Below, piece by piece: positions 4,561 to 53,046 of a stretch of DNA of 64,000 bases. The notes beneath the pieces are model-generated. The model ran no database searches. It was not told the origin of the DNA and was given only the letters and a program-made list of their open reading frames with translations. This DNA comes from Neoechinorhynchus agilis (taxonomy: Eukaryota; Animalia; Acanthocephala): assembly GCA_051530055.1 (NCBI GenBank), contig CM121341.1:930001-994000 (forward strand), written 5' to 3'. Each line of letters begins with the position of its first letter. The stretch's first letter is position 1. Position numbers and translations under genes: made by a program.

Positions 4561-4599
4561 CAATACAGAAATATCCTTAACAATCGCCTTCAATGGAAC

Positions 4600-9619: not shown

Positions 9620-10200
9620 CAACTGCCGTCCGGGTGTAACGGTCGAAAGGAGGAATGCAGCGGGAATGATCCTGTCCTCTGATCGCCAGTGATTCGTCTC
9701 AATCTCTTAGACAATTGATTTGCCAGATCCTGCGCCGCGGTACCAAACGACCTGGGCGTCTCGACGCCAAAGGGAACGAAATAATGATTTCAATCCAGGT
9801 CCCTGTATTTTGTCCTTTTGCGTTCCTCAGCGGCGGTTGCTGCTCCCCCTGGTTTAATGGTGACGGATTTTATGTTGCTGACTGCGAGCGTGGCGTCCCA
9901 GAGAAGGTATTTTCCTCCTCGCCACGGACCCAACCCTCCCATTCCACCAAAGACACTCTGAAGGAAAGTTTCACGTGGCATCTCCATTTCGCTGCAAAGG
10001 ACGTATTCGTATCGTCTAAAGTATATCGATGCGCATCTAGAAAAGTCATGTATTCAACATTTCTCAGTTTCATCAAGCTCGTCCTCGGCGGTACCTTCAT
10101 TTTATTTATTAGATAACAAGAATTGGACCTATGTACCTTTGGACCCTCTTGTGGCATTGATTTTGATGAAGATGAGGTAATCGTTATTTGAACGATAAGC
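9620..10200 (-). mobile_element. CRE-clade (restriction-like endonuclease) non-LTR retrotransposon 3' fragment
   Basis: PWRGGKYLLWDAT..LA.S, GGAATAAEERKRTKYRDL and HYFVPFGVET motifs; frameshifted. Confidence 0.75.
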
Positions 10201-10479
10201 AATATTGGTTTGAAACGGTGGAATGCGGATTTGGTGAGGTCGGGTGAAAATGTACATTCGGGTGGGAAGTTTGGTGTTCATTGTTTGCAGGGGTGCTTAT
10301 GAAGTTGGGTCTTTCCTTAGGTTCATTTCGGACAATGATATCCGAGAAAATTGGGCAGCATGGAAAAAAGGAGACGAATTAGGATGCCAGCATTGTAACT
10401 TTTATACGGGAAAGCAATTGGCGCAATAACAAACGACAAATTGTACTCAATTTTGGAGAAATTGAACGCCTCCAATGAT

Positions 10480-33904: not shown

Positions 33905-34565
33905 CTACAATGACAAAGGTAAATTTGAGTCTTTTGGGATACAGTTGGTGTTTTTCGCCCTTAACTCCATGATTTCTCGAGCATATGACCGAGCCCATTC
34001 CATTTTAAGCCTTGATAATGATGATTCAAAGAATCGATCAAGTCGAAGGGAGCGATGAAGACATTCGTACTCGTACGCCTGAACGATCATATCGATCACA
34101 TCCATATGACGAACAACCTGAGACTCTAAACTTTCCCCATTCTCGAATTCCTTATGACTTGATGAGCTTTAAAGATCCCCCAGATCCTTGATCACCATGT
34201 CGCATAAACAATGAAACAAATTTAGACTTTCGTTCATTCGAAAATTCCCGCAATAGGTCCCCCAACTCCATAACAGCTTCCATCTCCTTTGCATGTTTCA
34301 CCTCAGAAGCTACTTTATCCCTCGGTGTTATATCACCAACTAAACTCTCAGCCAGATCATGAACCAATGCCATTTCGACACATTTAAAGCGGTCCACCTT
34401 AATATCTTGAGGGAGAAGTTGACTTACCGACAATGCCATCCTAAACGAGTGATCAGCAACACTCTCAACCCGACCTGGAACACCACTCTCAAGCCACCCT
34501 TTCCTGAGCGTTCGTTTCAGTTGACCGGCTAACAACATAAACTGAAGTCCAAACGACGCAGACAT
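33905..34565 (-). CDS. HDDC2: HD domain-containing protein 2 (5'-deoxynucleotidase), two exons
   Basis: LKR..RKGW, ESVADHSFRMA, MALVHDLAESLVGDITP and DVIDMIVQAYEYE motifs; 52 nt interruption at 34151-34202. Confidence 0.9.
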
Positions 34566-34814
34566 TTCGAAGTGTTAGAGAGCAAGAAATTCGAGGGACG
34601 GAGATGTGGTCGAGTTATACAATCAGAAGAATCCTACTTCTCTAAAACAAGATTCACGGACTTGGGAAACATTGGGGAAGAAGGAAGTTTTTTAGTCCAC
34701 TCAGTGTAACCAATTACGGAGCCGCATTCCTACCTCCACACCCAATGACTCATTCAAACCAATGTTCAATTGCACATTTACTGTAAGCTTAACACTCGAT
34801 TATCTTCAATCAGA

Positions 34815-35591
34815 TCACGTTCGCCGCTTCTTGTTCATCAACGGTCGCTGCAGACGAGATGGTCTGCTCCTACTCCTATTCACAGCACGTTCAATTACAG
34901 TACCACTTTCATTGGGGACTTCATGTTCTTCTATTTGAGGACTTTCTTCGATCGTATGGTGATTCATAGCCGCAAATCCTTGGAGGAATTCAAAAGCGAG
35001 ATAATCTGGATTTAGTTGAAGCATTTGATTCTCCGAATTCGCTTCATAGATCGCCTCTTGGACCATTGAATGCTCTTCAGGAGCTTGGACCTCCTGCTGT
35101 GGATATTGTGACCGAGTAACTACAATCTTTATATCATCCCTTGGTACAATGTCAATCAAAAAATCATACTGTTCACTTCTAGACACTGCTGAACATACAT
35201 CACTCCTTTGAACGGTTCTTCTGCCTCCTTCTTGAGCACTGACCCAAGCGCGAAGTGTCAACTCGCCAATAAAGTACTCCGCCGCTTTCGATAGAAAAGA
35301 ACTCACATCACAACTTATCATATTGACAGTTTCGTCCATCTTAACGATCTTCTTGACTCTCGCCAATGGTAGATCGTAGGTACGGAGGAATACACGGTCT
35401 GCATTTGTGAGTCTCTGAGTGACATCAGGCCAAAAGTTTGTCAATCGAGCCTGTGCCTCAGCTAATCCATCCAGCATTTCATCGCTTAATCGGCCTAACC
35501 TATCCGATTGCCTCCTTGATATTGGTCTTGATATCGCAAATTCCCCCCGCATTGTACGCTGGGGCAACATTTCGTCGCTTTCATTATTCAT
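34815..35591 (-). CDS. NFYC: Nuclear transcription factor Y subunit C (histone fold), intronless
   Basis: LPLARVKKIVKMDE.V.MIS, FIGELTLRAW, RRTVQRSDV and YDFLIDIVPR motifs; likely ATG at 35591. Confidence 0.9.
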   Translation of the reverse strand: MNNESDEMLPQRTMRGEFAISRPISRRQSDRLGRLSDEMLDGLAEAQARLTNFWPDVTQRLTNADRVFLRTYDLPLARVKKIVKMDETVNMISCDVSSFLSKAAEYFIGELTLRAWVSAQEGGRRTVQRSDVCSAVSRSEQYDFLIDIVPRDDIKIVVTRSQYPQQEVQAPEEHSMVQEAIYEANSENQMLQLNPDYLAFEFLQGFAAMNHHTIEESPQIEEHEVPNESGTVIERAVNRSRSRPSRLQRPLMNKKRRT

Positions 35592-36783
35592 CGTTGCAAT
35601 ACTAAAAAACCCAAGGATACTGACCGAATTAGCGCGTGCGATCATTGGCTACATAAATGCAGCCAATCACAGTCCACGCGTATGGAACATTTTTCCATGC
35701 ACACACACAAACACGCCTAAACCCCACACCATGCATACTTTTCAATAATGTCATTCGGCGAAAGGCAGCCAATAGGATTGATGTTGCATTACGAGAGCAA
35801 TGCAAGTACTTGCTCAGACTTTCAGATAGAAAGCGCGTTATGAGGCTCTCGGAGAAAAATCAGTGAAAACATTCTTGATTGACGCAAAGTTTGGGAATTG
35901 CGTGCGCGTGTGTGTGTTTTCATGGACGAACAGGTACGCAAAAAACATTCCATCGAAACGTCATCATTTTTATAAGACTGAATTCTTCCGTATGATGACG
36001 TGTTACCAATAAGGAAGAGGGATATTTGGTCGATTTTTGTCATTGTTTGATTTCTATCTAAACTTGAAGTGCGTCTTTTTTATTCTGATCTAATCGCAAT
36101 ACAAATCTTCTCTTGTTCGCAAAAAAAATACGTTTTTTAAGCGATTAGTATCCAACAAATTATTGAAACGTCGCTCTCAGTTTTACTCGATTCCTTTTTT
36201 TTATCTAAGTGTGAACACAAAAGAATCGCGCATTAAGTTAAAGATATTCCCTTTTTTTGTTTCTTTGTATATAGTTCTGTAGGCGAGTATTCACTTTACT
36301 AAAGTAACGAAGTATTCGAGAAACAATTCTCTGAGTGAAATTTTATGATTTGTTTGAAATCGAACGATTGATACAATTCCATTTAACTATATGTAATCAT
36401 ATTTTATAGGCTATTTAATTTGAGAGTCATGAAATGAAAGTTTTCTAAATATAGTTTGCAGTATTTCTATCGCGTAAAATATTCATTGCCTTGAACACAG
36501 ACGCAATTTCTGAGTCTAAGACGTGATTGGCTAGAAAAATTGAATGTATAAACAAAAGCTTTTTACTGGTCTGTGAGCTAGAGCACTTAATGATAAAAAA
36601 GAATATAAACTTTGCTCTCAGCCAGACATAAAATAAAATAGTTTTTAATTTTATAGAATATGTTCGACTCACTTTTGCATGTTCAATTGCGAATACAAAA
36701 ATCAAAGAAAATAAACACGCTCAGTGATTTGGAGTCTAAAAGCTATGCTTTCTTCTCGTTAAACGATCATTTTTCATGCTTTC

Positions 36784-37110
36784 GATATGCGAGGAGTAGG
36801 TACCGGACTATATGATTAGAGAATTATTGTTTAGAAGTTTTCACCGAATGAACAATTTTTTATTGATATAAAAAACACGTTTCGAACCATGTAATTGGTT
36901 CATCATCAGTTCTAAAATACAAATAATTAAATGGTTATTCTGCTCGCACACGCGCTAATGGTTGATTTTGTTGTTCCATTTTTTATAACCATGAAGGCAG
37001 AGTTTGCAAAGCACGTATGAGAGCAGAATAACCAAGTGATGATGAACCAATCACGTTGTTTGCAGAACTTTTTTCAATAAAAAATTATTTACAAATTCTA
37101 AACAATAATC
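36784..37110. mobile_element. Same miniature hammerhead fold-back family, with a longer spacer
   Basis: CGATATGCGAGG tail; minus-strand CTGATGA T GAACC..GGTTC GAAAC; degenerate plus arm near 37035; TTTTTCAT(G/T)CT flanks. Confidence 0.65.
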
Positions 37111-37318
37111 CTAATTTTTCATTCTGCATTCATTTTTAGAAATTGATTTAAAATCTAACCAATAAAAGGGTTTTCATGGTCATTACAAAATCTTATTACA
37201 TGACCAAAATACGAATGAAATTTAGTTGAACCCCCCCCACCATAATTAAGCTGAATCACTGAATTTTAAGTTTTCGTTCTCCTATGAGATCGACCACCTC
37301 CATTTTCTTACAGATTTC

Positions 37319-38855
37319 ATGTTAATCGCCTATGTGCCGCCATTAGTGCTCCGTTGTTTCACCCGCCGCCGTCGTCTGCACTCATTGATTTCGCAGTTAT
37401 CGCTGCCGCATAGATCGCCGCCGCAAATCCGTGCCAAAAGCTACCTTCTCTCGTCCTGTGTAAAAGAACTCCGCCTCGTTATGGACAATGGAACAAAGTA
37501 TTTGGACAAGACTCAGTTTAATAGGACAATCAATTTGCCTTATGTAATTGTCGACAAGAAATACTACGAGCTATGGAAAGATATGCTCAAACACAATACA
37601 TTTCGTCGCAGCTCTTCGTGCAATTGTCGCCCTGACACTACCCTTCCATCGGATGATCCTCTACACGAAACCCATAAGAAACTATTTTTGAACAATACTG
37701 AATTTACGTGTCTAGAAGACGTTCAAAGATATGCAAAAGAAAAGTATCGGGAACGTCTTGCTCCTCAATTTCCGAATCCATGGACTCGGATCTGTAGATT
37801 TGGCCATGAGGACGTGTATATTACATACGAAAACGTGAGTATATCGGATGCGATTTCTGCAATACTGCCAGAAGATCTCGTTGACACTAGTGTGAATAGA
37901 GGCGGATACAAAGCGATAGGACATATTGCTCAAGTCAATCTGCAGGATGATGTTCTGCCTTATAAGTACGCCATAGGACAGATTTTGCTGGATAAGGTTT
38001 CGGGATGCAAAACAGTTGTAAACAAACTAGGAAAAATCGAGAATCTGTACAGAAATCTTGAATTTGAATTGATTGCCGGTGAACCTGATTACGTTGCTGA
38101 ATGTGCTGAAAATGATTGTGTTTACAAAGTCGACTTTACTCGTGTCTATTGGAATCCGGGATTGTCGAGTGAGCGAGAACGGACTGTAAAAGCAATTGAT
38201 CGTGGATCGATTGTGTTTGATGTTTTTGCTGGTATTGGTCCATTTAGCATTCCGCTAGTTAAGAAGAGATGCGAAGTTCATGCAAATGATTGGAATCCTG
38301 ATTGTTACGAACATATCATTCATAACATTGAGAAGAACTGTAAAACTTTAAAAGAAGCGGAACATTTATTTACTCCTTATAACATGGAAGGTCGTGAGTT
38401 TTTAAGGACAGTCGTCGTGCCAACCATTCTTGGCGAAAAAGTTAAACATGGTGACGGTCTTAATTCTAATGAAAACGTTCATATTATCATGAATTTGCCT
38501 GGATCCGCCGCCGAGTTTTTAGAATTAGTGGTTAAGAGTGTGTGATTGCAAAACTTCTCAACCACTGGTCGTAGACGAACTTGTTCCAATCTACGAAGCC
38601 CGTCCGTCTGCAACCAGGGCTCATGTTTTCGTTCAATGTTACTCATTTTCGCATTCAGAAGTCGGAGTGAACCAGCTGAGACGTCAAATGAATCGCATTT
38701 TCAATACCGATTTTAATGGATTTGTCAAAATTCGAGAAATCAAGCACGTGGGACGGTACAAGAATACTTATTGTATACATCTTTGCATTACAAAAAACAC
38801 AGACGAGTTCATGTTCCAGCAACATGTTAGCTCTTTTCGTGCCGGCCATGAGTAA
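37319..38855 (+). CDS. TRMT5: tRNA (guanine-37-N1) methyltransferase Trm5, two exons
   Basis: IGHIAQVNL, KTVVNK, FELIAGE, VYWN..L..ERER, DVFAGIGPFSIP, ANDWNP, MNLP and VQCYSF motifs; interruption at 38523-38574. Confidence 0.92.
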
Positions 38856-39290
38856 ATCAATGGGAACGGTCTTTTAGAATGTACAGGCTTCGTTTTTGTT
38901 TTATAAAGGATTTATTTTCTCCAAATTACATTTCAATGTAAAAATTTATTACTGTAAGAGAGATTATTTGAACATTTTCTTTGCCATTAGACGGTCAGCA
39001 AAACGGATTTATGGCTTCATAAGTTTTTTATTTCGCACAAACCGCCTGGATTATAATGCAGAACCATTTAAAGGTTTTTCTGGCGGAAATGTCTTAAATA
39101 TACGTTACTAATAATATAAAATGCCGTGCATATCAATTATTCTTTGATTCCTTCGCTGACTTGTTTGAGTCAACCATGAGCGAAAAAAATCTTAAATAAT
39201 ATGTATTTTAATTCGTCCGTGCTTAATTAACGTTCTCTTATTTTTTAGAACATTTTCACATAAAACTATCTGACGGAATCAATTCGAAAG

Positions 39291-41509
39291 ATGGGCAAAC
39301 GAAAGCATATCAAAAAGCAACCCGAGATGAGCGAAAGAGACCAATTGCACTTACAGGAATTCGGTACAAACCATCCCATTTATGACAAAATTTCAGAAAA
39401 TCATCGTGTTGACCTTAGTAAAACGAAATTAAAGAAACCGAAATTAGTTACTGAATCCGTGGATACGTTCGCAGAAGACGACGTGGATATCAACGCCTAC
39501 AATGATTTGCTGACTGATTTGGGCCTCACGAGATCCTATCGATCCGCAATAAAGGATACTTTTGAGAATACAAATGACATTGTTGAAAGTATAGAAGAGT
39601 ACAATGATGATAAGAGTGAGCGTTCTGGACAGTTTGTTGAATTTATGAGCTGGTTTAAGCTGTGTCGAGGATTCTTAAGTATCTCCATAAAGAATCTTTG
39701 CACTTAACCATATTATGTCTGATGAATTTAAAAAGGAAGATAGCAAGAAGTTACATGGTCTAATAGGAGCTTCTGTGATCGACGACGATAATGTGAAATT
39801 ATCTTATAAATATTTAGACCAATTTAAAGAGTCAAGAATCACGTCCTTTCCAGACATTGAAGATTTTGTTGATCAGAAATCATCCATTATGAAACACTAT
39901 TTAAAGCTCGTTACAAAAACCGTTAATCCAAAGCTAAACAAACTTCTTTTAAGGTCGATATTCCAATACAATGACGTTTGTTTCAGTTTGTCTGATGGGA
40001 ACTTGCAGGCCGCTTATTGTGCCCACAGCGTCTACCATGTCCTGCGAACTCGTGGAGTTGTTTTAGCCGGAGATCAGAAGGTTAAAAATGGTGAAGAAAG
40101 TCTCGATCAGGGATTCACTCGACCTAAAGTGCTATTTTTGGTTCCATTCAGATCAGTGGCACTTCGGATAAACGGCGAATTTTCCTCTTAATAGGAGAGA
40201 AATTCACAAATTATCTCAGTAGATCAAGTTCAAGTTTTTTTATCAATACCAGCACGTTTGAATTCATCCTGATTGGGTTTTCGGATCTCGTGGGGCAAAA
40301 TGTACGTTTATTTGGGTAGCTGAGAAATAACAAAAAATTCGTGACCCTATGGAAAAGATGAAAATCGCCAAAGCTGAAATGATTATTGAGTTAATAAAAC
40401 CGAAGAATAGTAATCAAATTACGATGTCTATGAATCGTCTATTTACCGATTACGGTATAGATTCCGAATTAGAAGAAGTAAAGATGCGCAAAGGGGATGC
40501 GAGCTGGCGAAAGACATTTCGTGGCAACATCGATGACCATTTTCGCCTTGGAATCAATGTTTCACGTCGATCACTTAGCCTCTTCGCTCCATACTATCAA
40601 TCAGACGTTATAATAGCATCTCCTCTTGGTTTGAAGACCTTAGTGACTGGGAGGAAGGAAAAAGCGATCAATTTCCTTTCTTCGATTGAGATAATGGTAA
40701 TCGATCAAGCCGAAGTAATTCTGCAACAAAATTGGGATCATGTGATTTCAGTGATCAATTTAATCAATCGAATTCCATCGGATCCAGCTCATATTGATTT
40801 TTCCCGGGTGCGACATCGTTATCTTGACGGTCACGCATCGAATTTTAGACAAACGATCGTAATCTCTCAGTATCCATCATCGTATTTTAAGAGTTTGATT
40901 GAACGCTGCAGAAATATTAGAGGAGCTTTGTTTATTGATCGAAAACTATCTGAAGGTTCAATTCGACTCCTGCGATTTCCGTTAAAACAAACATTTGTTT
41001 GCCTCAGTAGTAAAGATCGAATAGATGAATTCTTTACTAAAATCATAGAGCCATACACGGGTACTCATATTCGTACAATTATCTATATTCCCAGCTTCTT
41101 CGATTTCGTGTTAATCAAAAACCGAATGAACGATCTACGGACAAACGATCTAAAATTCACATTTTCCATTTTGACTGAACAGTGTTCCTCCAAAGACGCT
41201 GACCGATCTCGGTTTCGTTTCTTTCACAACAAAACTCAATTTCTACTGCTAACTGAACGGTATCATTTTTATCGAAGACATAAAATCAGAGGTGCTGATC
41301 AAGTCGTGTTTTATGATCTTCCAAATGATCCTCGATTTTATGCCGATTTGTGCCATATGCTGGACGAAAGTGCAACCAAACAGTGTATTGCTGCATTTGA
41401 ACGTCGAGATGTAACTAAACTCGTGAATGTACTTGGACAATGTTTAACGGCAAAGATCATTTGTAACAATGATGACAGAGAAGTTTATGTAATAAAATCG
41501 CGTTCATAA
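39291..41509 (+). CDS. UTP25: U3 snoRNA-associated protein 25 (DIEXF), three exons
   Basis: AYCAHSVYHVLRTR, DQGFTRPKVLFLVPFR, FRGNIDDHFRLG, YYQSDVIIASPLGL, FLSSIEI, QNWDHV and LLTERYHFYRR..IRG motifs; interruptions near 39632-39692 and 40172-40373. Confidence 0.92.
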
Positions 41510-41884
41510 CAAACGAAATCCTTTACTATCATTTCTTATCCAATAATGCCTTTAGAGATGGACAATAATATAAATTTCAGTCTTCGATTCATTCTAAAAG
41601 CACAGTGAAAAGCAGCGATAAATGTCGATATTGCTTGCTCGTTAATCCAAATGATTTTCCGTCTCTTCATTCATGTATTTCAAACAAAGATTGATGAGTG
41701 TATCGTAATTGCCAAAGTAGATTTTTTGGCAGGCAAAATCGCATCGCTACACTTCAACTGTTTTTGCATGATTCTTAAATCCTTAAAGAAATCAATATGA
41801 TTAGGACACCGCCGTTGTTTTCAATATCAAAAATAACAATATTCAGCCAATTATATCGATGGGAGAATGTTATACATTCAAAAT

Positions 41885-42085
41885 GTCGATATGTGAGGAG
41901 GTACCGGGTTATATGATTAAAAGTGTTATTTAGGTCTTCACCCGGTAAATACTTTTTTTATTAAAAACGTTTTGAACCTCATCAGGTTCATTATAAGTTC
42001 TTAAAACGAGATGTAAAGAACTCATTATGAATCTGACGTGGTTCAAAACGTCTTTACTAAAAATTCTTTACCGGGTGAAGACACG
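41885..42085. mobile_element. Degenerate copy of the miniature hammerhead fold-back family
   Basis: ATGTCGATATGTGAGG tail; inverted GTCTTCACCCGGTAAA..AAAACGTTTTGAACC arms. Confidence 0.7.
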
Positions 42086-42404
42086 TTCAGCAGCATTCAG
42101 CCTTGACTGCTAAAAATTCCTGCAGGAGCAATAAATTCCTTTTTGTAAAAGGTATAAACGTGAACAGATCTTCGTCTATAGTTTCGCAGACATTTTGGCA
42201 CCAGAATCATGATGAAGTCGAAGGTATGAAGGATGGAATGCAATCGTATAGTTTTAATGTAGCATTCAAACTAAATTTATTCCCAAAAAACAATTTACAC
42301 AAGAGCGAGTTTTGTATTTCCAGCCAATAAGGTTCCTTTATAAAGAAGTTGTTCATATATATGTATTTTTTTGATGATGAGAGGAATAGAGATTGATTTC
42401 TAAA

Positions 42405-42540
42405 TTCCCAATATTTTGTCCGTTTCGTCGGACTTCTTCAGGTTGCTTGTAAGTTTTTATTTTTTTACGCAAACACACTTAAAAATACTTACAGGTAACC
42501 TGAAGAAATCCGACGAGACGGACGAAGTATTGGGAATTCC
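42405..42540. repeat. Fold-back with paired CTGAAGAA(G/A)TCC...GGAC hammerhead-like arms
   Basis: Inverted arms AATTCCCAATATTTTGTCCGTTTCGTCGGACTTCTTCAGG and CCTGAAGAAATCCGACGAGACGGACGAAGTATTGGGAATT. Confidence 0.6.
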
Positions 42541-43489
42541 GTTAGTTGCTATTTTATCGTTTTACTAAAAGATGAGCTATGGAGCAATAAATTCGTCGCC
42601 CGAAAACAATTTAGTGTTTTTAACATCTTATGCGTGGTTCAATCGGTTACGTTTTTAACGAGTGGTGTAAGATGAGGCTTTTGACCTTACCCGGCTGAAT
42701 TATAGGCACTCTGGCCACCGATTTCGGCCAGTGAAGCGTTGATCTGCGCTCAATGCACATGAACGTTCGGTTATGAGTTGAGGCGGGACTCTTCCCTAAA
42801 GCGGTATTCTCGCCCCCTTTGGTTATGAGACATCGACGATAATGGATTTTGATATCTTCGACCCGAACGGGATTAGAATTTCTAATTATACAGTCATGGG
42901 CATTGAGTACATTCCAACGCTTTCCCGTCCAAATCGGTGGGCGGTGTGCTCAGGAAATCAGCCGCGTATAGTTAAAAACATCATTTTACACTACTCGTTA
43001 AAAATTTAGCGTTTAATCGATCGTCTGAGCATTCAAATAACTACATTCATATTTAAGGAAATATTAATGTTTATTAACACTTAACATTTTATCCGAATAA
43101 TAAAATAAGAAAGGCAAAAGTTTGTTCTATTGAGGATCGCATTCGGGTGCGGTTAGATATGTTGTTATTTTGGTCACTTGTCGACATCCGAGGGAGCTCG
43201 TTAAAGACGAATATATTTTTGTTGACGATCCCGGGTTCCCAATGAGTAATGCCTGGTAATTTTGAGATAGAATTGAACAATCAGTCGACACATATATATT
43301 CGTCTTTAATGATCTCTCTCTCTCGGATGTTGACAAGCGACCTAAATGATAATATAAAGGTTTTTGTTTCATATTCAGATTTAAGACAAAACGTAACTGA
43401 GTACCGCTGCCTTCTTTTTTTATGGCATTCCTTCGACAGTTATCTTTAAGAACCATCTTGTCCTAGAACACCACCGAGTCTTATGTTTT

Positions 43490-44660
43490 CTATTCATTCT
43501 TTTTTTCTTTACGTGGATTAGCTTCTCTTATTCCATTCCACTTGCCGAAAGTAAGCAAAAGATTAGTGTTCGCCTTACGGTTAAACATAAATGCAGCCAA
43601 ATGTAGAATGGATATTAGCAGCACGCATAATGCTAGAACCAAATTCAGCGCAAATCCTCTCTGGAACCAGGACATCAATACTCGTTGGCATCCCGTAGTG
43701 TTCATCGTAGTGGATTTATTGCTTCCTGCTCAACAAGACGAGTGTTTGTGCACACCTATTGTTCCGCCACTTACCGTCGCTGTCGAGTTGGAGGAGCTCA
43801 ATCGAGTTGGCGCACTCGGCGACGCTGATGTGTGATTTGCAACAGCTTCTTGGTGGCGTCCTATGAACATAGTCTTTATACGACTGCCAACCACAGCAAC
43901 TATATTGACGCTGAATGCTAGAGCACAATTGGGCGTTCTAGATTTAAAGGCCGTCCTAATTTTAATACTCACGAATTCACAAATAACTCAAGGAGCTCTT
44001 TTGCTTGTACGGGAATCATTACGAGGTCGTCTTTTGAGGTGACTAAGTCAAAAGCACGTTTCCTGTATTCAATCTCCATTGAGGCAAGCCCCTTCAACTG
44101 CATCCGAATAGTCGACACGAAAGGTAAAATCGTCGTGAATGAACCAAGCGATTGCCTTATCACTTAATAAGCAGGAGTTTTCGGACTTTTTTTGTAGAAA
44201 CATTTTGGTTTATACCCATATTCAGAATCCATAATAGGCTAACAGAGGTGCCCGTTATAAATAGCAACAAATTTATCCACGGGATTGTGAGGCAAATCGC
44301 AGTAAGCATGCATTTTCCCATCTCTTTTCCTCCATAAAATACCATTTTACGCGGAAATACGCGAGTTATGTGATTTTCAACTAGACAAACTAAACATTTT
44401 TCGTAGAATTCTCCAAAAACTATTCCCAATTTCACCTGTAAAAGACATCGACAGGTATGCAATCAAGACCACGAATTGGAACTGGGCGAACTTTCGTTTG
44501 TCCCAGTAAAGCATTTGGGAATTGTAGTCGATCCATGAGATCACGTTCTCGTCGTAGCCGAGTTCCGATATGAAAATCCATTGAATTATTAACGGAAGAG
44601 CCAGTAATAGGGAAAGCAGTGATATCGATAAATTGAAAGTAGATATGCCGTCCAAGGTGC
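43490..44660 (-). CDS. Tetraspanin, at least five exons; start codon not identified
   Basis: Four hydrophobic segments; IQRQYSCCG, PRSCC and TTGC cysteine pattern. GT-AG introns 44381-44435, 44098-44186, 43918-43972 and 43729-43774 all give in-frame joins. Confidence 0.85.
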
Positions 44661-47600
44661 ACTAAAGATAAATGTTTATGAATTTATTGTGGATTAAGAA
44701 CGTCTCTGTCTTAGAAAATAATGACTTAGTCGTTTTAGTTTTTAAAGAATATTCATTGCATAGATTTGACTTAACTTTTAAATAGCGTTAAATAGCAACA
44801 AGCGAAATAACATAAAACTCGTAGCGTTACATTTAGTTAATGACATTATTTTCGAGAAAGCGAGTGTTTGGCACAATATCAAAGCTTTTCCGGAAATCAA
44901 TTTTAAAAATTAGTTTACGACTTTAGCTGAGCATAGGGTGTTTTTCGATAAAAGTGCTCGTCGCGTTACGCAAAGTTAATTTATTAATTTTGCAAAATTA
45001 AACGGATTATCTAAAATTTGAATATTCGAACTTTTATAGATTTTTCTATTCAAAAGGCCAAAATTAGCATAAAGTTTTTAAACTCTGTCGCGTTTCATTT
45101 GACCATTTTAAATGATACCAATTGATAAAAATGAGATGTGGGCTTGTCTTTAAAAAAAATCAAAAACTATGAAGATGAGTACGACGAAGCTCGAAACGTT
45201 TATTTACCAAAAAAATTATTTACCGAGTGAAGACTTTTCAAAATTAGTGGTTATTTTTTGGGATGGGGTACCTCATATACAAACCATAGTTAAAAGAGTG
45301 GTCAAACGTGAATTCGTGTTCCGATTTTTCCCTGGACTTAGTCTCTTTTAGACGAGGAACATAAAGGTAGGTAATATTTGCTTTTCCCTCCACACGTTCT
45401 TTAACAATCACGCACCTCCTGCCTCGATCTTTTTCAACCTAATTGAGCAAAATATAATTATGGTGAAAATACTGCTGGTAATAGCATATTTGATTTATTG
45501 GAGATATTTCGCGAGGTAACCTTGTTACCTGGAGTATTTTCACCATAATTATACTTTGACTAACCCGGAGTATTTTAAATCGATGAATAATGAAACAATT
45601 TGGTTAAATCGCGTTGAGGATCTACTTTCAGGACGCAATTGAACACTAGTGTTCTTACTGTCGGAAATGAATAGCTAATGAGAAAGTGTTCTCTTGTGTG
45701 TGTGTGTGTGTGAATGCATTCACATACGCACAGTAGCAGCGCACTGAACATCGACAACGAATTCTGCCACAAACCAGCCTTGAATAAGGTTCTTTTCTTG
45801 TTTGGAGATACCCTGATACACCCGCTTGTTATGATTGTCTGTCGCTGTGATAGTAATGGAGCCTAAACATTGATTAGTATGACAGTTGATCGCATAGCAC
45901 ACTGTCAGAACAGTGCTCGGCAGTCATTGTCTTTTCCATTAACCGCTTTTTTGGCATATAAACAACTAGAGGTTATCCTGTGTGATTGGTCATTAGTCAG
46001 AAATTTAGCTTTGAAGAATTTGAGCGGAAAAAATTGAATTAAAAAAGACGTGTACGAACCACCAAAAGTAAATAAGAAAAAAAGTAGAGTCGATAGGTTG
46101 CGCTGTTGTGCGGTTCTATCGAAATTTCCCCATCACAAAATCTATTTCTTATATAAAGAATCCTTCAGACGAATTCTCCGGATTGTGCCGTATCAAATAA
46201 CGGGTTAAACCATAAAACTTATTGATGAAGTCTCTATCTTTGAGTTCTCTCTAGCAACCGAATAAAATCGAAATTATTTAAACATTCCATGCATAAACGT
46301 TTTAAAGAACATGCGCCGTCTAGTTGCAGATTTCGCGAACCTCGAGAAAAAACCAGTTTTCAGATCACGGTTTTTTAAAAACTAAAAATTACGAAGGTTT
46401 GTTACAGATCAACCCGTTTATTGTTGAGTAAACCAATCGCTAGAGCTTCTAATTAAACTAGAAATGTTTGAAATTCAAATTTCTCTAGAGAAGGCAACGA
46501 CTGTCTACGGGGATTAAGTCCTATTGCAATTTTCTTGAAAGAGTCAACAAATTGTAGAGATACTCATGGAGTAATCGATAAGGCACAAAAAGCAACATGC
46601 ATTAATGTCTTTATCGAATTAGTTTTTGAGAAAGGAGGGTCGATATGTAGGCTCCAAAGAAACATGAGAAAATGGCACTTTGATGGTAATTAAACACCAT
46701 CTTTCGGCTGTAATTTTTTAGATCAACATCATTCATCCGTCTAAGCGGAAACCAAAGCAATGTTTTGAAGAACAACTCAGTGAAAGGATTCAGAATTTTT
46801 TTCTTGTAGTAAACCAAAGGACAATCTCAGTATAGAAAATTACACAGAATTTTGGGACGTTGAGAAGGTATAAAAGCATTTTAAAGGCCGTTGCAGTCTT
46901 GAGGGGAAACTAAGCATCTATAAGAGTTATTTTTCTGACTTAGAAAGCCATAGTAGTTTCTAGAGTTTAATATATGTTGTTTTTATCTTCAATCTAGCAC
47001 GACGAGCACTTTTGTTTTAGAAGTGAAATAAAATAAGGACAAGCGCCATCATTGAAGCATTCCATCTGTACTCTCAATGGCATTATGGAAGATATCTTGC
47101 TCTACATCCATTGGGACGATGATTCCGATTAAAGGGCAGATTAACCCTAATACTGCTTAGGATATTAATACATAAACCTAGAATAAGGATGCGTTTTTGC
47201 AGTAACATATCCCTGGCATAATGAGACAGTGAGCATCTCTTGCTCCCAGTTGTTCTATTCTTGCTATTTGGTATTTAGCCAACTCAGCAAATGGTTCATA
47301 GCTGAGCGTTTATGCCAATCGGGCATATTTGAGAAAGATTCCGTAAGGCGAGAATGAATGCCAAATAGGAAAACCAAATGTCTTGTGTTTTAATAAAATA
47401 TCTTAAAGCAGAAACCTTTACTAACAAAGGAAAATTAAGACAGATAATTTATACTTTTAAATGCCGTATAACAGCCAAGCTAAAGACCTAAAAGTGGCTC
47501 TGCTTCTCATTTCCTCACAGAAAATTGCCCTCGAAACATGCGTTCTTCCCATCATGGCCAGGCTATCCACATTCTATAGCATTCCTCGTTGCTCGCAGCA

Positions 47601-47679
47601 TCGAGTATTTCATGAAGATGCAATACAAACCTCTAAAAAGATGGCCACTGCTTGTAAGTCTAGAGAACGTTTAGATTTA

Positions 47680-50600
47680 AGCCCCTTCTTCGTCTTTATA
47701 TAAATTAGTAATCGAGTTTTCGCCAATTGATATTTCCACCAACTATTAACTTCCCAGTCCTCATTGCTACTCTAAAGAAATTTTAACACGGCAAGCCACT
47801 TGGATGCCCGATAAAAATCCTTTCGATTTGAGCCCCCTTCTTCGTCTTTATATAAATTAGTAATCGAGTTTTCGCCCATTGATATTTCCACCAACTATTA
47901 ACTTCCCAGTCCTCATTGCTACTCTAAAGAAATTTTAACACGGCAAGCCACTTGGATGCCCGATAAAAATCCTTTCGATTTGAGCCCCCTTCTTCGTCTT
48001 TATATAAATTAGTAATCGAGTTTTCGCCCATTGATATTTCCACCAACTATTAACTTCCCAGTCCTCATTGCTACTCTAAAGAAATTTTTACATGGCAAGT
48101 CACTCGGATGGCCGATAAAAATCCTTTCGATTTGTGTCCCCTTCTCCGTCTTTATAAAAATTAGTAATAGAGTATTCGCCCATTGATATTTCCGCCAACT
48201 ATTAACTTCCCAGTCCTCATTGCTACTATAAAGAAATTTTAACATGGCGAGCCACTCGGATGGCCGATAAAAATCCTTTCGATTTGAGCCCTTCTACGTC
48301 TTTATATAAATTAGTAATCGAATTTTCGCCCATTGATATTTCTGCCAACTATTAAATTCCCAGTCCTCATTGCTACTCTAAAGAAGTTTTAACATGGCGA
48401 GCCACTCGGATGGCCGATAAAAATCCTTCCGATTTGAACCCTTTTCGTCTTTATATAAATTAGTAATCGAGTTTTCGCCCATTGATATTTCCACCAACTA
48501 TTAACTTCCCAGTCCTCATTGCTACTCTAAAGAAATTTTAGCATGGCAAGCCGCTCGATGCCCGATAAAATCCTTTCGATTTGAGTCCCTTCTCCGTCTT
48601 TATATAAATTAGTAATCGAGTTTTCGCCCATTGATATTTCCACCAACTATTAACTTCCCAGTCCTCATTGCTACTCTAAAGAAATTTTTACATGGCAAGT
48701 CACTCGGATGGCCGATAAAAATCCTTTCGATTTGTGTCCCCTTCTCCGTCTTTATAAAAATTAGTAATAGAGTATTCGCCCATTGATATTTCTGCCAACT
48801 ATTAACTTCCCAGTCCTCATTGCTACTATAAAGAAATTTTAACATGGCGAGCCACTCGGATGGCCGATAAAAATCCTTTCGATTTGAGCCCCCTTCTCCG
48901 TCTTTATATAAATTAGTAATCGAGTTTTCGCCCATTGATATTTCTGCCAACTATTAACTTCCCAGTCCTCATTGCTACTCTAAAGAAATTTTAACATGGC
49001 GAGCCACTCGGATGGCCGATAAAAATCCTTTCGATTTGAGAACCCTTCTTCGTCTTTATATAAATTAGTAATCGAGTTTTCGCCCATTGATATTTCCACC
49101 AACTATTAACTTCCCAGTCCTCATTGCTACTCTAAAGAAATTTTAGCATGGCAAGCCACTCGGATGCCCGATAAAAATCCTTTCGATTTGAGTCCCCTTC
49201 TCCGTCTTTATATAAATTAGTAATCGAGTTTTCGCCCATTGATATTTCCACCAACTATTAACTTCCCAGTCCTCATTGCTACTCTAAAGAAATTTTAACA
49301 TGGCGAGCCACTCGGATGGCCGATAAAAATCCTTCCGATTTCGGAACCCTTCTTCGTCTTTATATAAATTAGTAATCGAGTTTTCGCCCATTCATATTTC
49401 CACCAACTATTAACTTCCCAGTCCTCATTGCTACTCTAAAGAAATTTTAGCATGGCAAGCCGCTCGGATGCCCGATAAAAATCCTTTCGATTTGAGTCCC
49501 CTTCTCCGTCTTTATATAAATTAGTAATCGAATTTTCGCCCATTGATATTTCCACCAACTATTAACTTCCCAGTCCTCATTGCTACTCTAAAGAAATTTT
49601 AACATGGCAAGCCACTCGGATGGCCGATAAAAATCCTTCCGATTTCGGAACCCTTCTTCGTCTTTATATAAATTAGTAATCGAGTTTTCGCCCATTGATA
49701 TTTCCACCAACTATTAACTTCCCAGTCCTCATTGCTACTCTAAAGAAATTTTAACATGGCAAGCCACTCGGATGCCCGATAAAAATCCTTTCGATTTGAG
49801 CCCCCTTCTCCGTCTTTATATAAATTAGTAATCGAGTTTTCGCCCATTGATATTTCCACCAACTATTAACTTCCCAGTCCTCATTGCTACTCTAAAGAAA
49901 TTTTAACATGGCAAGCCACTCGGATGGCCGATAAAAATCCTTTCGATTTGAACCCTTCTTCGTCTTTATATAAATTAGTAATCGAGTTTTCGCCCATTGA
50001 TATTTCCACCAACTATTAACTTCCCAGTCCTCATTGCTACTCTAAAGAAATTTTAACATGGCAAGCCACTCGGATGCCCGATAAAAATCCTTTCGATTTG
50101 AGTCCCCTTCTCCGTCTTTATATAAATTAGTAATCGAGTTTTCGCCCATTGATATTTCCACCAACTATTAACTTCCCAGTCCTCATTGCTACTCTAAAGA
50201 AATTTTTACATGGCAAGCCACTCGGATGCCCGATAAAAATCCTTTCGATTTGAGTCCCCTTCTCCGTCTTTATATAAATTAGTAATCGAGTTTTCGCCCA
50301 TTGATATTTCCACCAACTATTAACTTCCCAGTCCTCATTGCTACTCTAAAGAAATTTTTACATGGCAAGCCACTCGGATGCCCGATAAAAATCCTTTCGA
50401 TTTGAGCCCCCTTCTCCGTCTTTATATAAATTAGTAATCGAGTTTTCGCCCATTGATATTTCCACCAACTATTAACTTCCCAGTCCTCATTGCTACTCTA
50501 AAGAAATTTTTACATGGCAAGCCACTCGGATGCCCGATAAAAATCCTTTCGATTTGAGCCCCCTTCTTCGTCTTTATATAAATTAGTAATTGAGTTTTCG

Positions 50601-50693
50601 CCCATTGATATTTCCACCAACTATTAACTTCCCAGTCCTCATTGCTACTCTAAAGAAATTTTAACATGGCAACCCGCTCGGATGCCCGATAAA
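47680..50693. repeat. ~152 bp satellite, about 20 copies
   Basis: The TAAATTAGTAATCGAG anchor recurs at 47701, 47853, 48005 and onward; high identity between units. Confidence 0.95.
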
Positions 50694-51696
50694 ATAATAA
50701 CTGTCCAATCTCACCAAAAGTGTTTGAAGATATACAATAAACATAATTTGTTGTTGACCTTATGCCTAGTTTCCTAATAACGAAGATAGCAAGAATTTCT
50801 ATATTGAGCAACAGTCTTTAACCTCGTCGCAATTTGCGACTTATCTTAGACAGTTTTAGTGAACCGTAGTAAGTGCTATTCACTATCGAGATAGCACTCA
50901 AGGCACAAAAATGGATATGAGCCTAAGACAAGTATTTCCCTCGTTTTAGAGGTAGTTTCTAGATTAATAGAAGAACAAAGCAGCTACCCGAACTACTTTG
51001 CTGACGATTCCCCCATTTTTTCTTGAACATCTACTATAAACATCGTACAAGTGTTTTACGATTTGCCTTATTGGCCACCTAAATCATCAAATCCATGGTG
51101 AGTATTTAGAGCGCTTATAGAACATCGATCGCTAAATGAAGCAATTCGCATTCTTACATTTTTTGTATGCTTTCGGAATTTGTAGCTCGCATTTCCACTC
51201 TTCAGGGTAGTGATTTTATAATTTGTATATTTATTTCATCGTTTTTGAATCAAGAGTAAAATAATTCATCGATGCCTTAAAATTTAATTCTTTACTTTTG
51301 AAATTCACGGCAGTTTTCCTTCACTTTCTTCTTAGAAAGAAGGTAATGAAAGTTATTGTTCTATAGAACTCATACGTTTATCGTGTTTAAATGTTAGCTG
51401 AACTCGATGAAATCGGCAACGGCATAATAAACAAGGGTTTAGAGTAGAAACCAGTTTTATCTTTGGAGATAACTTAAAAAGAAACAAATTTGAGTGTTAT
51501 TTTCAGTCTCTTTTATTCTGTTAGAAAACCTAGAGTAAACTTGAAAGTTGGCAAGAGAAAAGTTTCGCGATGAACCCCGTCGAATATTTTTGTGTAATGT
51601 TAGTTGATCGCTGCGCATACAGAGAGCCCATAAACATATCTCTACTCATTGCGCAGTGTGCGTTTTGAAACGTTGTTCAAATTGTTCGAAGTTAGG

Positions 51697-53046
51697 ATGC
51701 TTAAACGACTTCAGGTACGTACCTGCACACTATTTGCTAACCGGAACGCGAGTGCATTTTCGATCATCACCGCCAATATTCTTGTTCCTTCCTGACCTCG
51801 TTGATTGCAGGTTCGTTCTCGCAATCTTGCTTATTCCTTAATAAGTGGATTGTCACTGACTCGAAAAAAAGTGCGCAACTCAGCAACTGACAGGTTTCGC
51901 AACTACACCACCCTCGCTGCAACAACAACAACGAAGGAGGAGGAGGAGGAAGATAAACTCGACGATATAATGATGAGCACTTCGTCATTGACGGCTCTTC
52001 AACAAACGAACCAGCCATCTCTTAGTCATGGAAGTTCTGCCTTGGTCCGCCGAAGCATCTCGTCCACCGCAGCGGAACCCAGGGTCGTGGGAAGCGTAAT
52101 GCGTTGCTGTTGTAAAGGAGTGCCTAGTAGTTGCGGTAGTGATGAAGTTATATCAGCAGCAGAATCGTTTGTCTCGTCTTCGTCAAGTAAATCAACGATG
52201 TTGATAGCACGCCAACAACCAACCAATGTAAGACCGAGCCTTTTACTTAAGCGATACAAGTCGCATATATTCGGTGGTGGTGGAAACGAAGATAGCGCCG
52301 GTCGCTATGCAAATAGCAGTGTTGCCAGCTCCTCTGATGAATTTTTTGTGTCTTCAGGCAACTATAGAGCTTCTTGTCCAAACATCTATGAGAATCGAAA
52401 TAACTTTCAAGAAATGACAAGGACGTTTTCGTCTTCATGTGATGCTTTGACACTTAATCATCATCGACTCTTTGATTATCCCAGCATGAACGAGTATATA
52501 ACTGATGAAAACGAATATAGGGTCGTTCGGGATCGTAGGTTGAAGCGTGAACCGAGCTATATGGATTCTAGTGACTTTAGTGATTTATCACAGCTTGACA
52601 GGAGAAGCGATTTGCAACATTTGGACGATCGATCACGTCTGGATCTATACAGACGAAGAAGCTGCGGCGGTGGATCGGCTGGTCTTGATCGATGGTTTAG
52701 ACCGTTGTCGCACTTTCCATCCATGGCGTCCACTACTCTAAGCTACTGTAAAAGTTTACTCAGCTGAATTCGTTTCTGTATGAAAGGTGGGAATTAATCG
52801 CGCGCGAATTCATTTGAGTTGAGTAAAGGGTACACGAGTCCCAGGCTTGGATGGTGGAAAGGTTCGTCTTTATCAGGCGATGGATGCCGTACTACAATGA
52901 GTGGTGGTGGTGGTGGTGGTGGAGTCGGGCGTATAGCACGACGGATAAGCACGGTACATTGCTTGCTTTCCATCTCGACAAGACAGATCACGACTCCGCC
53001 AGGAATCAACAACAAATTCTCTGTCTCCGAAACTGATGTCTACTGA
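51697..53046 (+). CDS. Ser-rich low-complexity 5' part of an unidentified gene; downstream exons not found
   Basis: MLKRLQ exon 51697-51714 joins VRSRN through a GT-AG intron 51715-51810. The long open frame continues in the same frame after a stop-containing hairpin at 52758-52823. Confidence 0.55.

What the first reader, a model, noticed from the sequence alone, without database searches (positions are those of the whole stretch)
33905..52823. Candidate structure-guided non-canonical intron system: non-GT 5' ends, AG 3' ends, fixed +2/-6 terminal stem
Seen: unrelated genes are interrupted by short fold-back segments with no shared sequence. Removing them as HDDC2 34151-34202 (CG..AG, 52 nt), TRMT5 38523-38574 (AA..AG, 52 nt) and 52758-52823 (AC..AG, 66 nt) restores the frame. 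In all three, intron nt +2 pairs with nt -6 (10/12, 14/15 and 15/16 pairs counting G-U), leaving a 5 nt overhang ending in AG. Two GT-AG introns (44098-44186, 6121-6173) show the same register. UTP25 40172-40373 is similar but offset (+3/-5). Known analogues: euglenid nonconventional hairpin introns, Fritillaria borealis non-canonical introns, inverted-repeat introns of Amoebophrya and relaxed donors in Oikopleura. Inference: the stem positions the 5' splice site and replaces GT recognition. A fully relaxed donor with retained AG and this register is not a pattern I recognise from those systems.
Basis: partly seen in the sequence, partly recalled or inferred. Interest (0 to 1): 0.92.

Follow-up and report, generated by a model that had tools for sequence, protein, structure and literature searches.

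The report
RNA-confirmed hairpin introns in acanthocephalan
In the thorny-headed worm Neoechinorhynchus agilis, public RNA assemblies show that short hairpin-forming inserts without GT-AG ends are cut exactly out of the TRMT5 and UTP25 messages while staying in the DNA.

Summary
The core observation is real and now has RNA support. RNA contigs of two runs skip three non-GT-AG, stem-closed inserts. These are 38520-38571 in TRMT5 (52 nt), 39655-39703 in UTP25 (49 nt, new) and 40170-40371 in UTP25 (202 nt). A DNA contig run and raw WGS reads at about 13-26x keep all three and show no empty-site reads. The same RNA contigs remove four ordinary GT-AG introns from the neighbouring tetraspanin gene.

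UTP25 intron 2 is AA..AA, not AC..AG, although an in-frame GT-AG alternative was available. The TRMT5 junction is ambiguous over five registers. The 'GT-AG intron' 44098-44186 is exon. No single stem-to-junction register fits all three introns.

All three junctions can be read T|A...|A (p about 2e-4). Two carry 4-nt direct repeats (TAGA, TTAA). All three have terminal stems in the best 1% of window background.

The 52.8-kb case is unresolved.

The best reading is transposon-like foldback inserts removed by hairpin-guided RNA excision, possibly like SOS splicing. A relaxed spliceosome is the close rival.

The scan flagged this class before in other windows of this genome, without RNA evidence. 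No paper in the searched library reports it.

The parts
38520..38571 (+). TRMT5 non-canonical intron, 52 nt. The junction is ambiguous up to 38524-38575. It is flanked by the direct repeat TAGA. The T|A register is 38521-38572. A 10-bp terminal stem (two G-U pairs) spans 38524-38533 and 38560-38569.
   Evidence: RNA contigs X1 and X7 skip it, with zero depth inside. The DNA contig (X6) and raw WGS reads (X13) keep it. Fold -15.7 kcal. Duplex energy in the best 0.7% of background. TRM5/TYW2 domain in the upstream ORF.
39655..39703 (+). The junction is ambiguous up to 39659-39707. It is flanked by the direct repeat TTAA. A 14-bp stem with one bulge reaches the last intron base in register 0.
   Evidence: Joint 39654>39704 in X1 and X7, absent from DNA runs. 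Fold -12.8 kcal. Duplex energy in the best 0.9%. Sense strand pairs better than antisense, -15.5 against -9.3 kcal.
40170..40371 (+). UTP25 intron 2, 202 nt, AA..AA (or 40171-40372, also AA..AA). The terminal stem runs GGCG.. / ..CGCC, starting at 40174 and ending at 40369.
   Evidence: Joint 40169>40372 with no mismatched letters in X1 and X7, absent from DNA runs. The Pfam UTP25 profile runs 14-80 before and 82-265 after the insert. Duplex energy in the best 0.5%.
34153..34206 (-). HDDC2 52-nt fold-back insert. The predicted removal is 34153-34204, 34154-34205 or 34155-34206 (equivalent registers, TA-flanked 50-nt element). That gives mRNA ...TTGTTT^AAGGAATTC (Lys).
   Evidence: Homology only. 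The alignment with P0002 (67% identical) is ungapped across the junction. The junction column in 116 homologues holds E44, A18, K15, R14 and M0. Stem -10.6 kcal, 5% of background. No RNA was laid here.
52758..52824 (+). Hairpin of 66-67 nt overlapping the stop codon of an orphan ORF (51805-52767), flanked by TA..TA. It is unresolved whether it is an intron.
   Evidence: Strong stem, -17.8 kcal, best 0.2%. No Pfam family and no homologue apart from the window's own 265-aa product. No RNA was laid here.
43342..43392 (-). Ordinary GT-AG intron of the tetraspanin gene (51 nt). It serves as a control.
   Evidence: RNA joint in X7. Ends GT..AG. No terminal stem (0.84 of background).
43726..43774 (-). 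Ordinary GT-AG intron of the tetraspanin gene (49 nt).
   Evidence: RNA joints in X1 and X7. GTAAGT..CAG.
43918..43972 (-). Ordinary GT-AG intron of the tetraspanin gene (55 nt).
   Evidence: RNA joints in X1 and X7. GTGAGT..TAG.
44163..44215 (-). Ordinary GT-AG intron of the tetraspanin gene (53 nt).
   Evidence: RNA joints in X1 and X7. RNA contigs are colinear over 43973-44162.
37319..38855 (+). TRMT5 gene, two exons. The public or called model stops at 408 aa inside the insert.
39291..41509 (+). UTP25 gene, three exons (39291-39654, 39704-40169, 40372-41509). The NCBI model ACOME3_000147 holds only the last 385 aa.
33905..34565 (-). HDDC2 gene, two exons. The called product is truncated at 137 aa.

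Best explanation
Shown: in Neoechinorhynchus agilis, conserved genes are interrupted by short, mutually unrelated fold-back inserts (49, 52 and 202 nt here). The inserts stay in the genome and are removed from the RNA at one exact junction, which restores the conserved reading frame. Ordinary GT-AG introns are removed from the neighbouring gene in the same RNA.

Anatomy: a 10-14-bp stem joins the two ends of each insert. The cuts lie in the few unpaired bases outside the stem, 6-7 nt summed over both sides. Every proven junction can be read as exon...T | A-insert ... | A-exon, so the mRNA reads T^A. Two of the three inserts are flanked by 4-nt direct repeats that contain or begin with TA.

Inferred origin: these are miniature inverted-repeat (foldback) DNA elements that landed in exons at TA-containing sites. 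Removing the element plus one repeat copy restores the sequence that was there before insertion.

Inferred mechanism, my commitment: pairing of the insert's ends is the recognition signal. A structure-guided cut-and-ligate pathway then removes the insert. This would be the kind described as SOS splicing in C. elegans and human cells: inverted-repeat pairing, an unknown nuclease, the ligase RTCB with AKAP17A and CAAP1. It is also analogous to euglenid nonconventional intron removal. In this worm the pathway would have become constitutive and exact. A cut at UpA leaving 2',3'-cyclic phosphate and 5'-OH ends would suit RTCB and would explain the T^A junctions.

My odds: about 0.95 that removal is at the RNA level and exact, about 0.7 that the inserts derive from transposons, and about 0.5 that the machinery is non-spliceosomal.
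For: -: three joints appear in RNA contigs of two runs at full exon depth. The bin depths equal exon depth times the exon fraction, so depth inside the inserts is zero.
- none of the joints appears in DNA contig run X6 (colinear over 38400-41906) or in raw WGS reads X13 (about 13-26x), which come from a different sample and study.
- the in-frame GT-AG alternative 40156-40357 and an AG 2 nt downstream of the real 3' junction are both ignored.
- the UTP25 Pfam profile is continuous across the junction (positions 80 and 82).
- stems lie in the best 0.5-0.9% of background for 3 of 3 non-canonical introns, against 0 of 4 GT-AG introns below 1%.
- a junction ambiguity of 4 nt or more has probability 0.023 per random segment and was seen in 2 of 3. 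The T|A...|A reading has probability 0.056 and was seen in 3 of 3, which is about 2e-4.
- in the T|A register the 5' exon ends TTT in 4 of 5 inserts.
- the sense strand pairs as well as or better than the antisense strand in all five, and the non-Watson-Crick pairs in the stems are G-U.
- the stem starts within 3-4 nt of the 5' cut, where U1 and U6 would need single-stranded RNA.
- (PMC12779559): SOS splicing is triggered by inverted-repeat pairing, is not bound to GU-AG, resists pladienolide B, acts on RNA while the DNA keeps the element, and is conserved between nematode and human.
Against: - SOS splicing as published is imprecise, with several sites, indels and many out-of-frame products. 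It was shown with 54-nt ITRs. Here there is one junction per insert and the stems are 10-14 bp. Contigs hide minor isoforms, so precision is not fully shown.
- No factor dependence, lariat, circle or RNA-end chemistry could be tested.
- The inserts are single-copy and share no sequence (and the DNA depth), so the transposon origin rests only on inverted and direct repeats.
- UTP25 intron 2 has only a 1-nt repeat.
- In Fritillaria borealis, very similar TIR-derived non-GT-AG introns need the U2 spliceosome.
- The short non-canonical introns (49-52 nt) have the same length as the ordinary introns (49-55 nt), which could mean one machinery handles both.
- Only three junctions are RNA-proven.
Confidence: 0.5

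Rival explanations
1. The inserts are spliceosomal introns. Under this reading the N. agilis U2-type spliceosome has relaxed or altered terminal-nucleotide requirements, as in Fritillaria borealis. The stem, a relic of transposon TIRs, only brings the ends together or is incidental.
For: - Fritillaria non-GT-AG introns derive from TIRs of non-autonomous DNA transposons and need the U2 spliceosome. Their commonest termini, AG/AC and AG/AT, start with A and end with a pyrimidine.
- The T|A register here gives A...T in TRMT5 and UTP25 intron 1.
- The non-canonical lengths of 49-52 nt equal the canonical 49-55 nt.
- CTNAY-like motifs sit 12-15 nt from the 3' end of the TRMT5 and HDDC2 inserts (read from the sequence, weak).
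Against: - No register gives a common terminal dinucleotide, and UTP25 intron 2 is A..A in both registers.
- Neighbouring introns have strong standard GTAAGT or GTGAGT ... YAG signals, so the spliceosome here looks conventional.
- A good in-frame GT-AG pair around UTP25 intron 2 is not used.
- Positions +4 onward are buried in a stem.
- There is no polypyrimidine tract.
Confidence: 0.37
2. In it, a stem in a fixed register (intron +2 pairs with -6, leaving a 5-nt 3' overhang ending in AG) sets the 5' splice site, while a normal AG acceptor is kept.
For: TRMT5 allows this register. HDDC2 and the 52.8-kb hairpin can be drawn that way.
Against: - UTP25 intron 2 ends AA, the AG just downstream stays in the mRNA, and only (4,2) or (3,3) offsets are possible.
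- UTP25 intron 1 allows (7,0) to (3,4) only.
- One supporting 'GT-AG' example is exon and the other has no stem.
Confidence: 0.03
3. There is no RNA processing at all. The skips could be artefacts or DNA differences: reverse-transcriptase template switching across hairpins between direct repeats, presence/absence polymorphism of the inserts between the RNA and DNA animals, or somatic DNA elimination. If the mRNA kept the insert, ribosomal bypassing would be needed.
For: Direct repeats plus a hairpin are the classic setting for RT template switching. The RNA and DNA runs come from different samples. Contigs drop rare variants.
Against: - The skipped form carries the full exon depth and the insert zero depth in two RNA runs. 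RT artefacts are minority products.
- UTP25 intron 2 has only a 1-nt repeat.
- Two DNA data sets from different studies both keep all three inserts, with no empty-site read at 13-26x.
- Retention would truncate essential TRMT5 and UTP25. Exact removal restores profile continuity.
Confidence: 0.04

Closest known systems
SOS splicing of DNA transposons from animal mRNAs (C. elegans, human cells; Zhao et al., Nature 2025, PMC12779559)
   Same: It acts in animals. The element stays in DNA and is removed from RNA. The trigger is pairing of inverted terminal repeats whatever their sequence. Splice sites lie at or near the repeat ends and are mostly not GU-AG. It acts on exonic insertions and can restore gene function.
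   Different: Published SOS splicing is imprecise, with several sites, indels and many out-of-frame products, and is described as a fail-safe for recent insertions with 54-nt ITRs. Here each insert has one exact junction in contigs of two runs. The stems are 10-14 bp, the inserts are 49-202 nt and single-copy, and they sit as fixed parts of essential genes. Dependence on AKAP17A, CAAP1 or RTCB was not tested.
Nonconventional introns of euglenids (Milanowski et al.; Nomura et al., PNAS 2025, PMC12501133)
   Same: They have variable non-GT-AG borders and a pyrimidine|purine tendency at both junctions. A stem brings the ends together and starts about 3 nt inside the 5' end. TSD-like repeats sit at the junctions, there is no polypyrimidine tract, and they coexist with conventional introns.
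   Different: The Euglena code is N3-CDG ... CH'G-N5-6 | R. Here the stems have no CAG/CTG core and the 3' spacer is 2-4 nt, not 5-6. The host is a protist lineage, not an animal.
Introner elements / non-canonical introns of Amoebophrya (Farhat et al. 2021, PMC7789003)
   Same: They have 8-20-nt inverted repeats at the intron ends, 3-5-nt direct repeats overlapping the exon/intron borders, no common terminal dinucleotide, a variable splice site relative to the hairpin, and broken standard gene prediction.
   Different: Amoebophrya elements partly form repeated families. The inserts here are single-copy and unrelated within the window. The host is a dinoflagellate, and the mechanism there is also unknown.
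Non-canonical introns of the tunicate Fritillaria borealis (Henriet et al. 2019; bioRxiv 10.1101/2025.08.15.670264)
   Same: It is an animal. The non-GT-AG introns derive from TIRs of non-autonomous DNA transposons, begin with A and often end with T or C, and lie at lineage-specific positions.
   Different: In Fritillaria about 95% of introns are non-canonical, with preferred termini AG/AC and AG/AT, and removal needs the U2 spliceosome with duplicated U2AF. Here canonical introns with strong signals coexist (4 of 7 in 6 kb) and no preferred dinucleotide exists.

Membership tests
SOS splicing targets | The element is present in DNA and excised from the mRNA | tested here: met
   three joints in RNA contigs of X1 and X7, none in DNA contigs X6 or raw WGS reads X13.
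SOS splicing targets | Inverted repeats able to pair flank the excised segment, independent of sequence | tested here: met
   10-14-bp terminal stems, best 0.5-0.9% of background. No shared sequence.
SOS splicing targets | Excision sites are not restricted to GU-AG | tested here: met
   the ends are TA..CG (and four other registers), TT..AC (and four others), and AA..AA.
SOS splicing targets | Imprecise excision: several sites, indels, out-of-frame products | tested here: inconclusive
   One search shows one junction per insert in two runs. Logan contigs drop rare variants, so raw reads are needed.
SOS splicing targets | Dependence on AKAP17A, CAAP1 and RTCB; insensitivity to SF3B inhibition | not testable with these tools
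   No genome-wide search of this animal and no experiment was possible.
Euglenid nonconventional introns | Signature 5'-N3-CDG ... CH'G-N5-6 | purine exon start (PMC12501133) | tested here: not met
   the stems start with ATT, GTG or GGCG and have no CAG/CTG core. The 3' spacer is 2-4 nt. A purine as first exon base is possible in all three.
Euglenid nonconventional introns | A stem brings the non-canonical ends together; coexistence with conventional introns | tested here: met
Amoebophrya-type introner elements | 8-20-nt inverted repeat at the ends plus 3-5-nt direct repeat over the borders, with non-canonical ends | tested here: met
   TAGA and TTAA repeats in 2 of 3, with p about 0.002. UTP25 intron 2 has only 1 nt.
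Amoebophrya-type introner elements | Members of repeated (multi-copy) families | tested here: not met
   no other copy in the window; single-copy DNA depth over the inserts.
Fritillaria-type spliceosomal non-canonical introns | Preferred termini AG/AC or AG/AT | tested here: not met
   no register of TRMT5, UTP25 intron 1 or UTP25 intron 2 gives AG..AC or AG..AT. The nearest are AG..GT, AG..TA and AA..AA.
Fritillaria-type spliceosomal non-canonical introns | Removal requires the U2 spliceosome | not testable with these tools
   It needs inhibitor treatment or lariat reads. RNA runs are held as contigs only, and read laying was used once.
U12-type (AT-AC) introns | Conserved 5' RTATCCTT and branch site TCCTTAAC | tested here: not met
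   Read from the sequences: no RTATCCTT at any allowed 5' end.
tRNA-type bulge-helix-bulge splicing | Two 3-nt bulges separated by a 4-bp helix formed by the intron 5' end and the 3' exon | tested here: not met
   Checked by hand on the TRMT5 sequence. The 4 nt before the stem (TAGA) cannot pair with the 4 nt after a 3-nt bulge (AGAC).

The most novel reading that the evidence does not exclude
An animal phylum routinely uses a spliceosome-independent pathway as a second, constitutive and exact intron-removal system. The pathway is guided by the hairpin and works by cutting and ligating, like SOS splicing with RTCB. It acts on a large share of the interruptions in essential genes (3 of 7 RNA-proven introns in this 6-kb stretch). 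The inserts are domesticated foldback transposons cut at UpA.
Probability: 0.45. Interest if true: 0.92.

Novelty: new variant of a known kind. Interest (0 to 1): 0.85.

Why it matters
1. This is direct RNA-versus-DNA evidence that a bilaterian animal outside the tunicates removes stem-closed, non-GT-AG inserts exactly from the mRNAs of essential genes. No paper in the searched library reports this for Acanthocephala or other Syndermata.

2. SOS splicing was described in 2025 as an imprecise emergency repair with no known coding targets under long-term selection. A genome in which such inserts are fixed in housekeeping genes would be its first natural large-scale use. It would also be a living model of how transposon insertions become introns.

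3. Practical consequence: public gene models break at these inserts. UTP25 is split into 279 and 385 aa, TRMT5 is cut at 408 aa and HDDC2 at 137 aa. Published counts of 'missing' conserved genes in N. agilis include 280 metazoan BUSCO genes absent together with Seison plus 148 more absent in the acanthocephalan (PMC12256650). These counts may be partly annotation artefacts, and that can be tested with existing data.

Tried and rejected
- An unsupervised census of the window gave nothing. I searched for terminal helices of -12 kcal or better, span up to 320 nt, whose removal fuses two open frames of at least 60 codons. It found 79 hits among 1944 helices. Random segments of the same lengths gave 74, so the test has no power. 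The short hits I inspected were false or unverifiable. For example, 1376-1442 is two copies of a palindrome around an in-frame stop in a retroelement gag gene.
- Transcript-derived proteins of this species are not in the protein collection. Only the broken genomic ORFs came back. The HDDC2 and 52.8-kb junctions therefore could not be read from RNA.
- No close relative of UTP25 was found. The next hit is 35% identical, so conservation of the intron or compensatory changes across species could not be examined.
- U12-type and bulge-helix-bulge readings were rejected on sequence.
- The gap in the WD40-like gene at 61.2-61.6 kb looked like a stem-closed insert. It is better explained as an ordinary GT..AG intron that contains an inverted-repeat element.
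- Rfam gave no hit in the window.
- The assembly accession was not found in any paper. The species name comes from the NCBI protein title.

Full report
**What the window is.** The window is a compact animal chromosome segment. The 386-aa ORF at 40349-41509 is 100% identical to NCBI 'hypothetical protein ACOME3_000147 [Neoechinorhynchus agilis]'. The HDDC2 ORF lies on record CM121341.1 of assembly GCA_051530055.1, which is 19.4 Mb long. They are TRM5/TYW2 methyltransferase (37319-38545), UTP25 (39715-40191 and 40349-41509), a tetraspanin (43.5-44.5 kb, minus strand) and an NC2/NF-Y-type histone-fold gene (34815-35645, minus strand). HDDC2 is confirmed by homologues.

**The decisive test.** The look-up of sequencing runs listed RNA runs of one study that hold 0.65-0.92 of the words of this region, and DNA runs that hold 0.98. 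I laid two RNA contig runs (X1, X7), one DNA contig run (X6) and one raw WGS run from another study (X13) on 38400-44399. The RNA contigs skip three stretches:
- 38520-38571 (52 nt, junction movable by 4)
- 39655-39703 (49 nt, movable by 4)
- 40170-40371 (202 nt, movable by 1)

The depth in the bins that hold these stretches equals exon depth times the exon fraction. For example, 107.4 x 148/200 = 79.5 in X1 and 145.3 x 28/200 = 20.3 in X7. So no contig depth lies inside the inserts. The DNA contig is colinear over 38400-41906. The raw reads, at about 13-26x, show none of these joints.

The same RNA contigs skip four minus-strand GT-AG introns of the tetraspanin gene: 43342-43392, 43726-43774, 43918-43972 and 44163-44215. 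The runs are therefore RNA, and ordinary splicing with strong signals (GTAAGT, GTGAGT, YAG) coexists with the unusual removals.

- TRMT5: the 52-nt removal is confirmed and the 37-nt GT-AG alternative is excluded.
- UTP25 intron 2: the removal is confirmed and the GT-AG alternative of equal length (40156-40357) is excluded. The junction is ...CGGAT^AGCTG, which means AA..AA at 40170-40371 or 40171-40372. The Pfam profile runs to position 80 before and from position 82 after the junction.
- The 'GT-AG intron 44098-44186' is exon. RNA contigs run through 43973-44162 and the real intron is 44163-44215.
- 6121-6173 has no stem above background.

**Are the stems more than chance?** I measured the duplex energy between the first and last 22 nt against 4000 random 52-nt segments of the window. 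The three proven inserts fall at 0.7%, 0.9% and 0.5%. The four proven GT-AG introns fall at 84%, 15%, 5% and 93%. The sense strand pairs as well as or better than the antisense strand in all five candidates, most clearly in UTP25 intron 1 (-15.5 against -9.3 kcal). The non-Watson-Crick pairs in the stems are G-U, which hints at selection on the RNA.

**Register.** Count the unpaired bases between each cut and the stem, and allow for junction ambiguity.
- TRMT5 allows (4,2), (3,3), (2,4), (1,5) and (0,6).
- UTP25 intron 2 allows (4,2) and (3,3).
- UTP25 intron 1 allows (7,0) to (3,4).

No single pair of offsets fits all three, although the sum is 6-7.

What does fit all three is a 5' cut between T and A, with A as the first base of the 3' exon. 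A random segment allows this with probability 0.056, so three of three is about 2e-4. A junction ambiguity of 4 nt or more has probability 0.023 and occurs in two of three. In this register four of five inserts follow a 5' exon ending in TTT.

The exon ends flanking the three proven inserts can also pair with each other, at -5.5 to -6.2 kcal, which is the top 5-7% of background. Those of the GT-AG introns cannot. This is suggestive only.

**HDDC2 and the 52.8-kb case.** No RNA could be laid there, because read laying allows one call of at most 6 kb.

For HDDC2, a 67%-identical relative (P0002) aligns without a gap across the junction, so a 52-nt removal is right. A junction 2-3 nt upstream gives Lys, where 15 homologues have K and 14 have R. 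That junction makes the insert a 50-nt element flanked by TA..TA, as in TRMT5, and gives the offsets (5,1), (4,2) or (3,3). I therefore predict removal of 34153-34204, or the equivalent 34154-34205 or 34155-34206.

The 52.8-kb hairpin is strong (best 0.2%). It overlaps the stop codon of an orphan ORF that has no family and no homologue. The case stays open.

**Rivals to RNA processing.**
- Reverse-transcriptase template switching between direct repeats across a hairpin is a known source of false junctions. Here, though, the skipped form is the only form at full depth in two runs. One insert has only a 1-nt repeat. Retention would truncate essential proteins.
- Presence/absence polymorphism or somatic DNA elimination is unlikely. 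Two DNA data sets from different studies keep all three inserts without a single empty-site read.

**Mechanism.** Nothing here measures chemistry. Four points speak for a structure-guided, non-spliceosomal route:
- There is no common terminal nucleotide pair, and UTP25 intron 2 is A..A.
- Usable GT and AG sites nearby are ignored.
- Stems begin 3-4 nt from the 5' cut, where U1 and U6 pairing would be needed.
- The spliceosome acting next door is otherwise conventional.

An animal pathway of this logic is published. SOS splicing removes DNA transposons from C. elegans and human mRNAs. It is triggered by pairing of inverted repeats of any sequence, is not bound to GU-AG, resists pladienolide B, and needs AKAP17A, CAAP1 and the ligase RTCB. 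Its nuclease is unknown (PMC12779559).

The difference is important. SOS splicing is described as imprecise and as a stop-gap, whereas here each insert has one exact junction and sits fixed in a housekeeping gene. A cut at UpA that leaves ends fit for RTCB would explain the T^A junctions, but this is inference.

The close rival is a relaxed spliceosome, as in Fritillaria borealis. There, TIR-derived AG/AC and AG/AT introns need the U2 spliceosome. The equal length of the short non-canonical introns (49-52 nt) and the canonical ones (49-55 nt) fits that view. I put non-spliceosomal at about 0.5 and spliceosomal at about 0.37.

**Comparison with known systems.**
- The Euglena code N3-CDG...CH'G-N5-6|R is not met.
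- The Amoebophrya description fits in form: 8-20-nt inverted repeat, 3-5-nt direct repeat, variable site relative to the hairpin. However, the inserts here are single-copy and unrelated.
- The Fritillaria termini are not met.
- U12 and bulge-helix-bulge signatures are absent.

**Novelty and context.** Searches of the paper library found nothing on non-canonical introns in Acanthocephala. The N. agilis transcriptome and genome-reduction papers do not mention introns. Earlier agents of this scan reported the same class in other windows of this genome, always without RNA. This report adds the RNA-versus-DNA evidence and corrects the junction rule.

The called or public gene models break exactly at the inserts. 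That bears on published gene-loss counts for this species.

Noticed in passing
window 41880-42460: A multi-copy repeat lies between UTP25 and the tetraspanin gene. DNA word depth is 3000-11000 against about 125 for single-copy sequence. There are many loose ends and variant letters in DNA and RNA runs.
   Followed up: no
window 760-1800 (-): Degenerate LTR-retroelement gag and protease ORFs. The apparent hairpin 1376-1442 is two copies of the palindrome TCAGCTGA around an in-frame TGA, not an intron.
   Followed up: partly
window 60174-62060 (+): A WD40-like gene whose gap (about 61152-61587) reads as an ordinary GTACGG..AG intron. The intron contains a TA-flanked inverted-repeat element (61187-61585). 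So foldback elements also sit inside normal introns. No RNA was checked.
   Followed up: partly
window 56102-56169 (+): A 68-nt hairpin flanked by the direct repeat GCAG, between two orphan ORFs (55885-56157 and 56126-56893). It is a possible further non-canonical intron, with no homology or RNA support.
   Followed up: partly
window 40234: A one-base T insertion polymorphism in a T run inside UTP25 intron 2 (6 of 13 WGS reads). Several exon SNPs appear in the WGS run, and 39629 A>G is also seen in one RNA contig.
   Followed up: no
window 33905-44514; locus L001: Called or public gene models are broken at the inserts. UTP25 is split into 279 aa and 385 aa (the latter is NCBI ACOME3_000147), TRMT5 ends at 408 aa and HDDC2 at 137 aa. 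The 279-aa model uses a roughly 61-nt gap instead of the real 49-nt intron.
   Followed up: yes
window 48009-48245 and 48609-48950 (-): Two near-identical ORFs about 600 nt apart, likely copies of a repeat unit.
   Followed up: no
whole window: The Rfam gathering-threshold scan found no RNA family, and ARAGORN found no tRNA.
   Followed up: no
window 18555-19166 (+): A reverse-transcriptase (RVT_1) ORF, which is a retroelement fragment.
   Followed up: no
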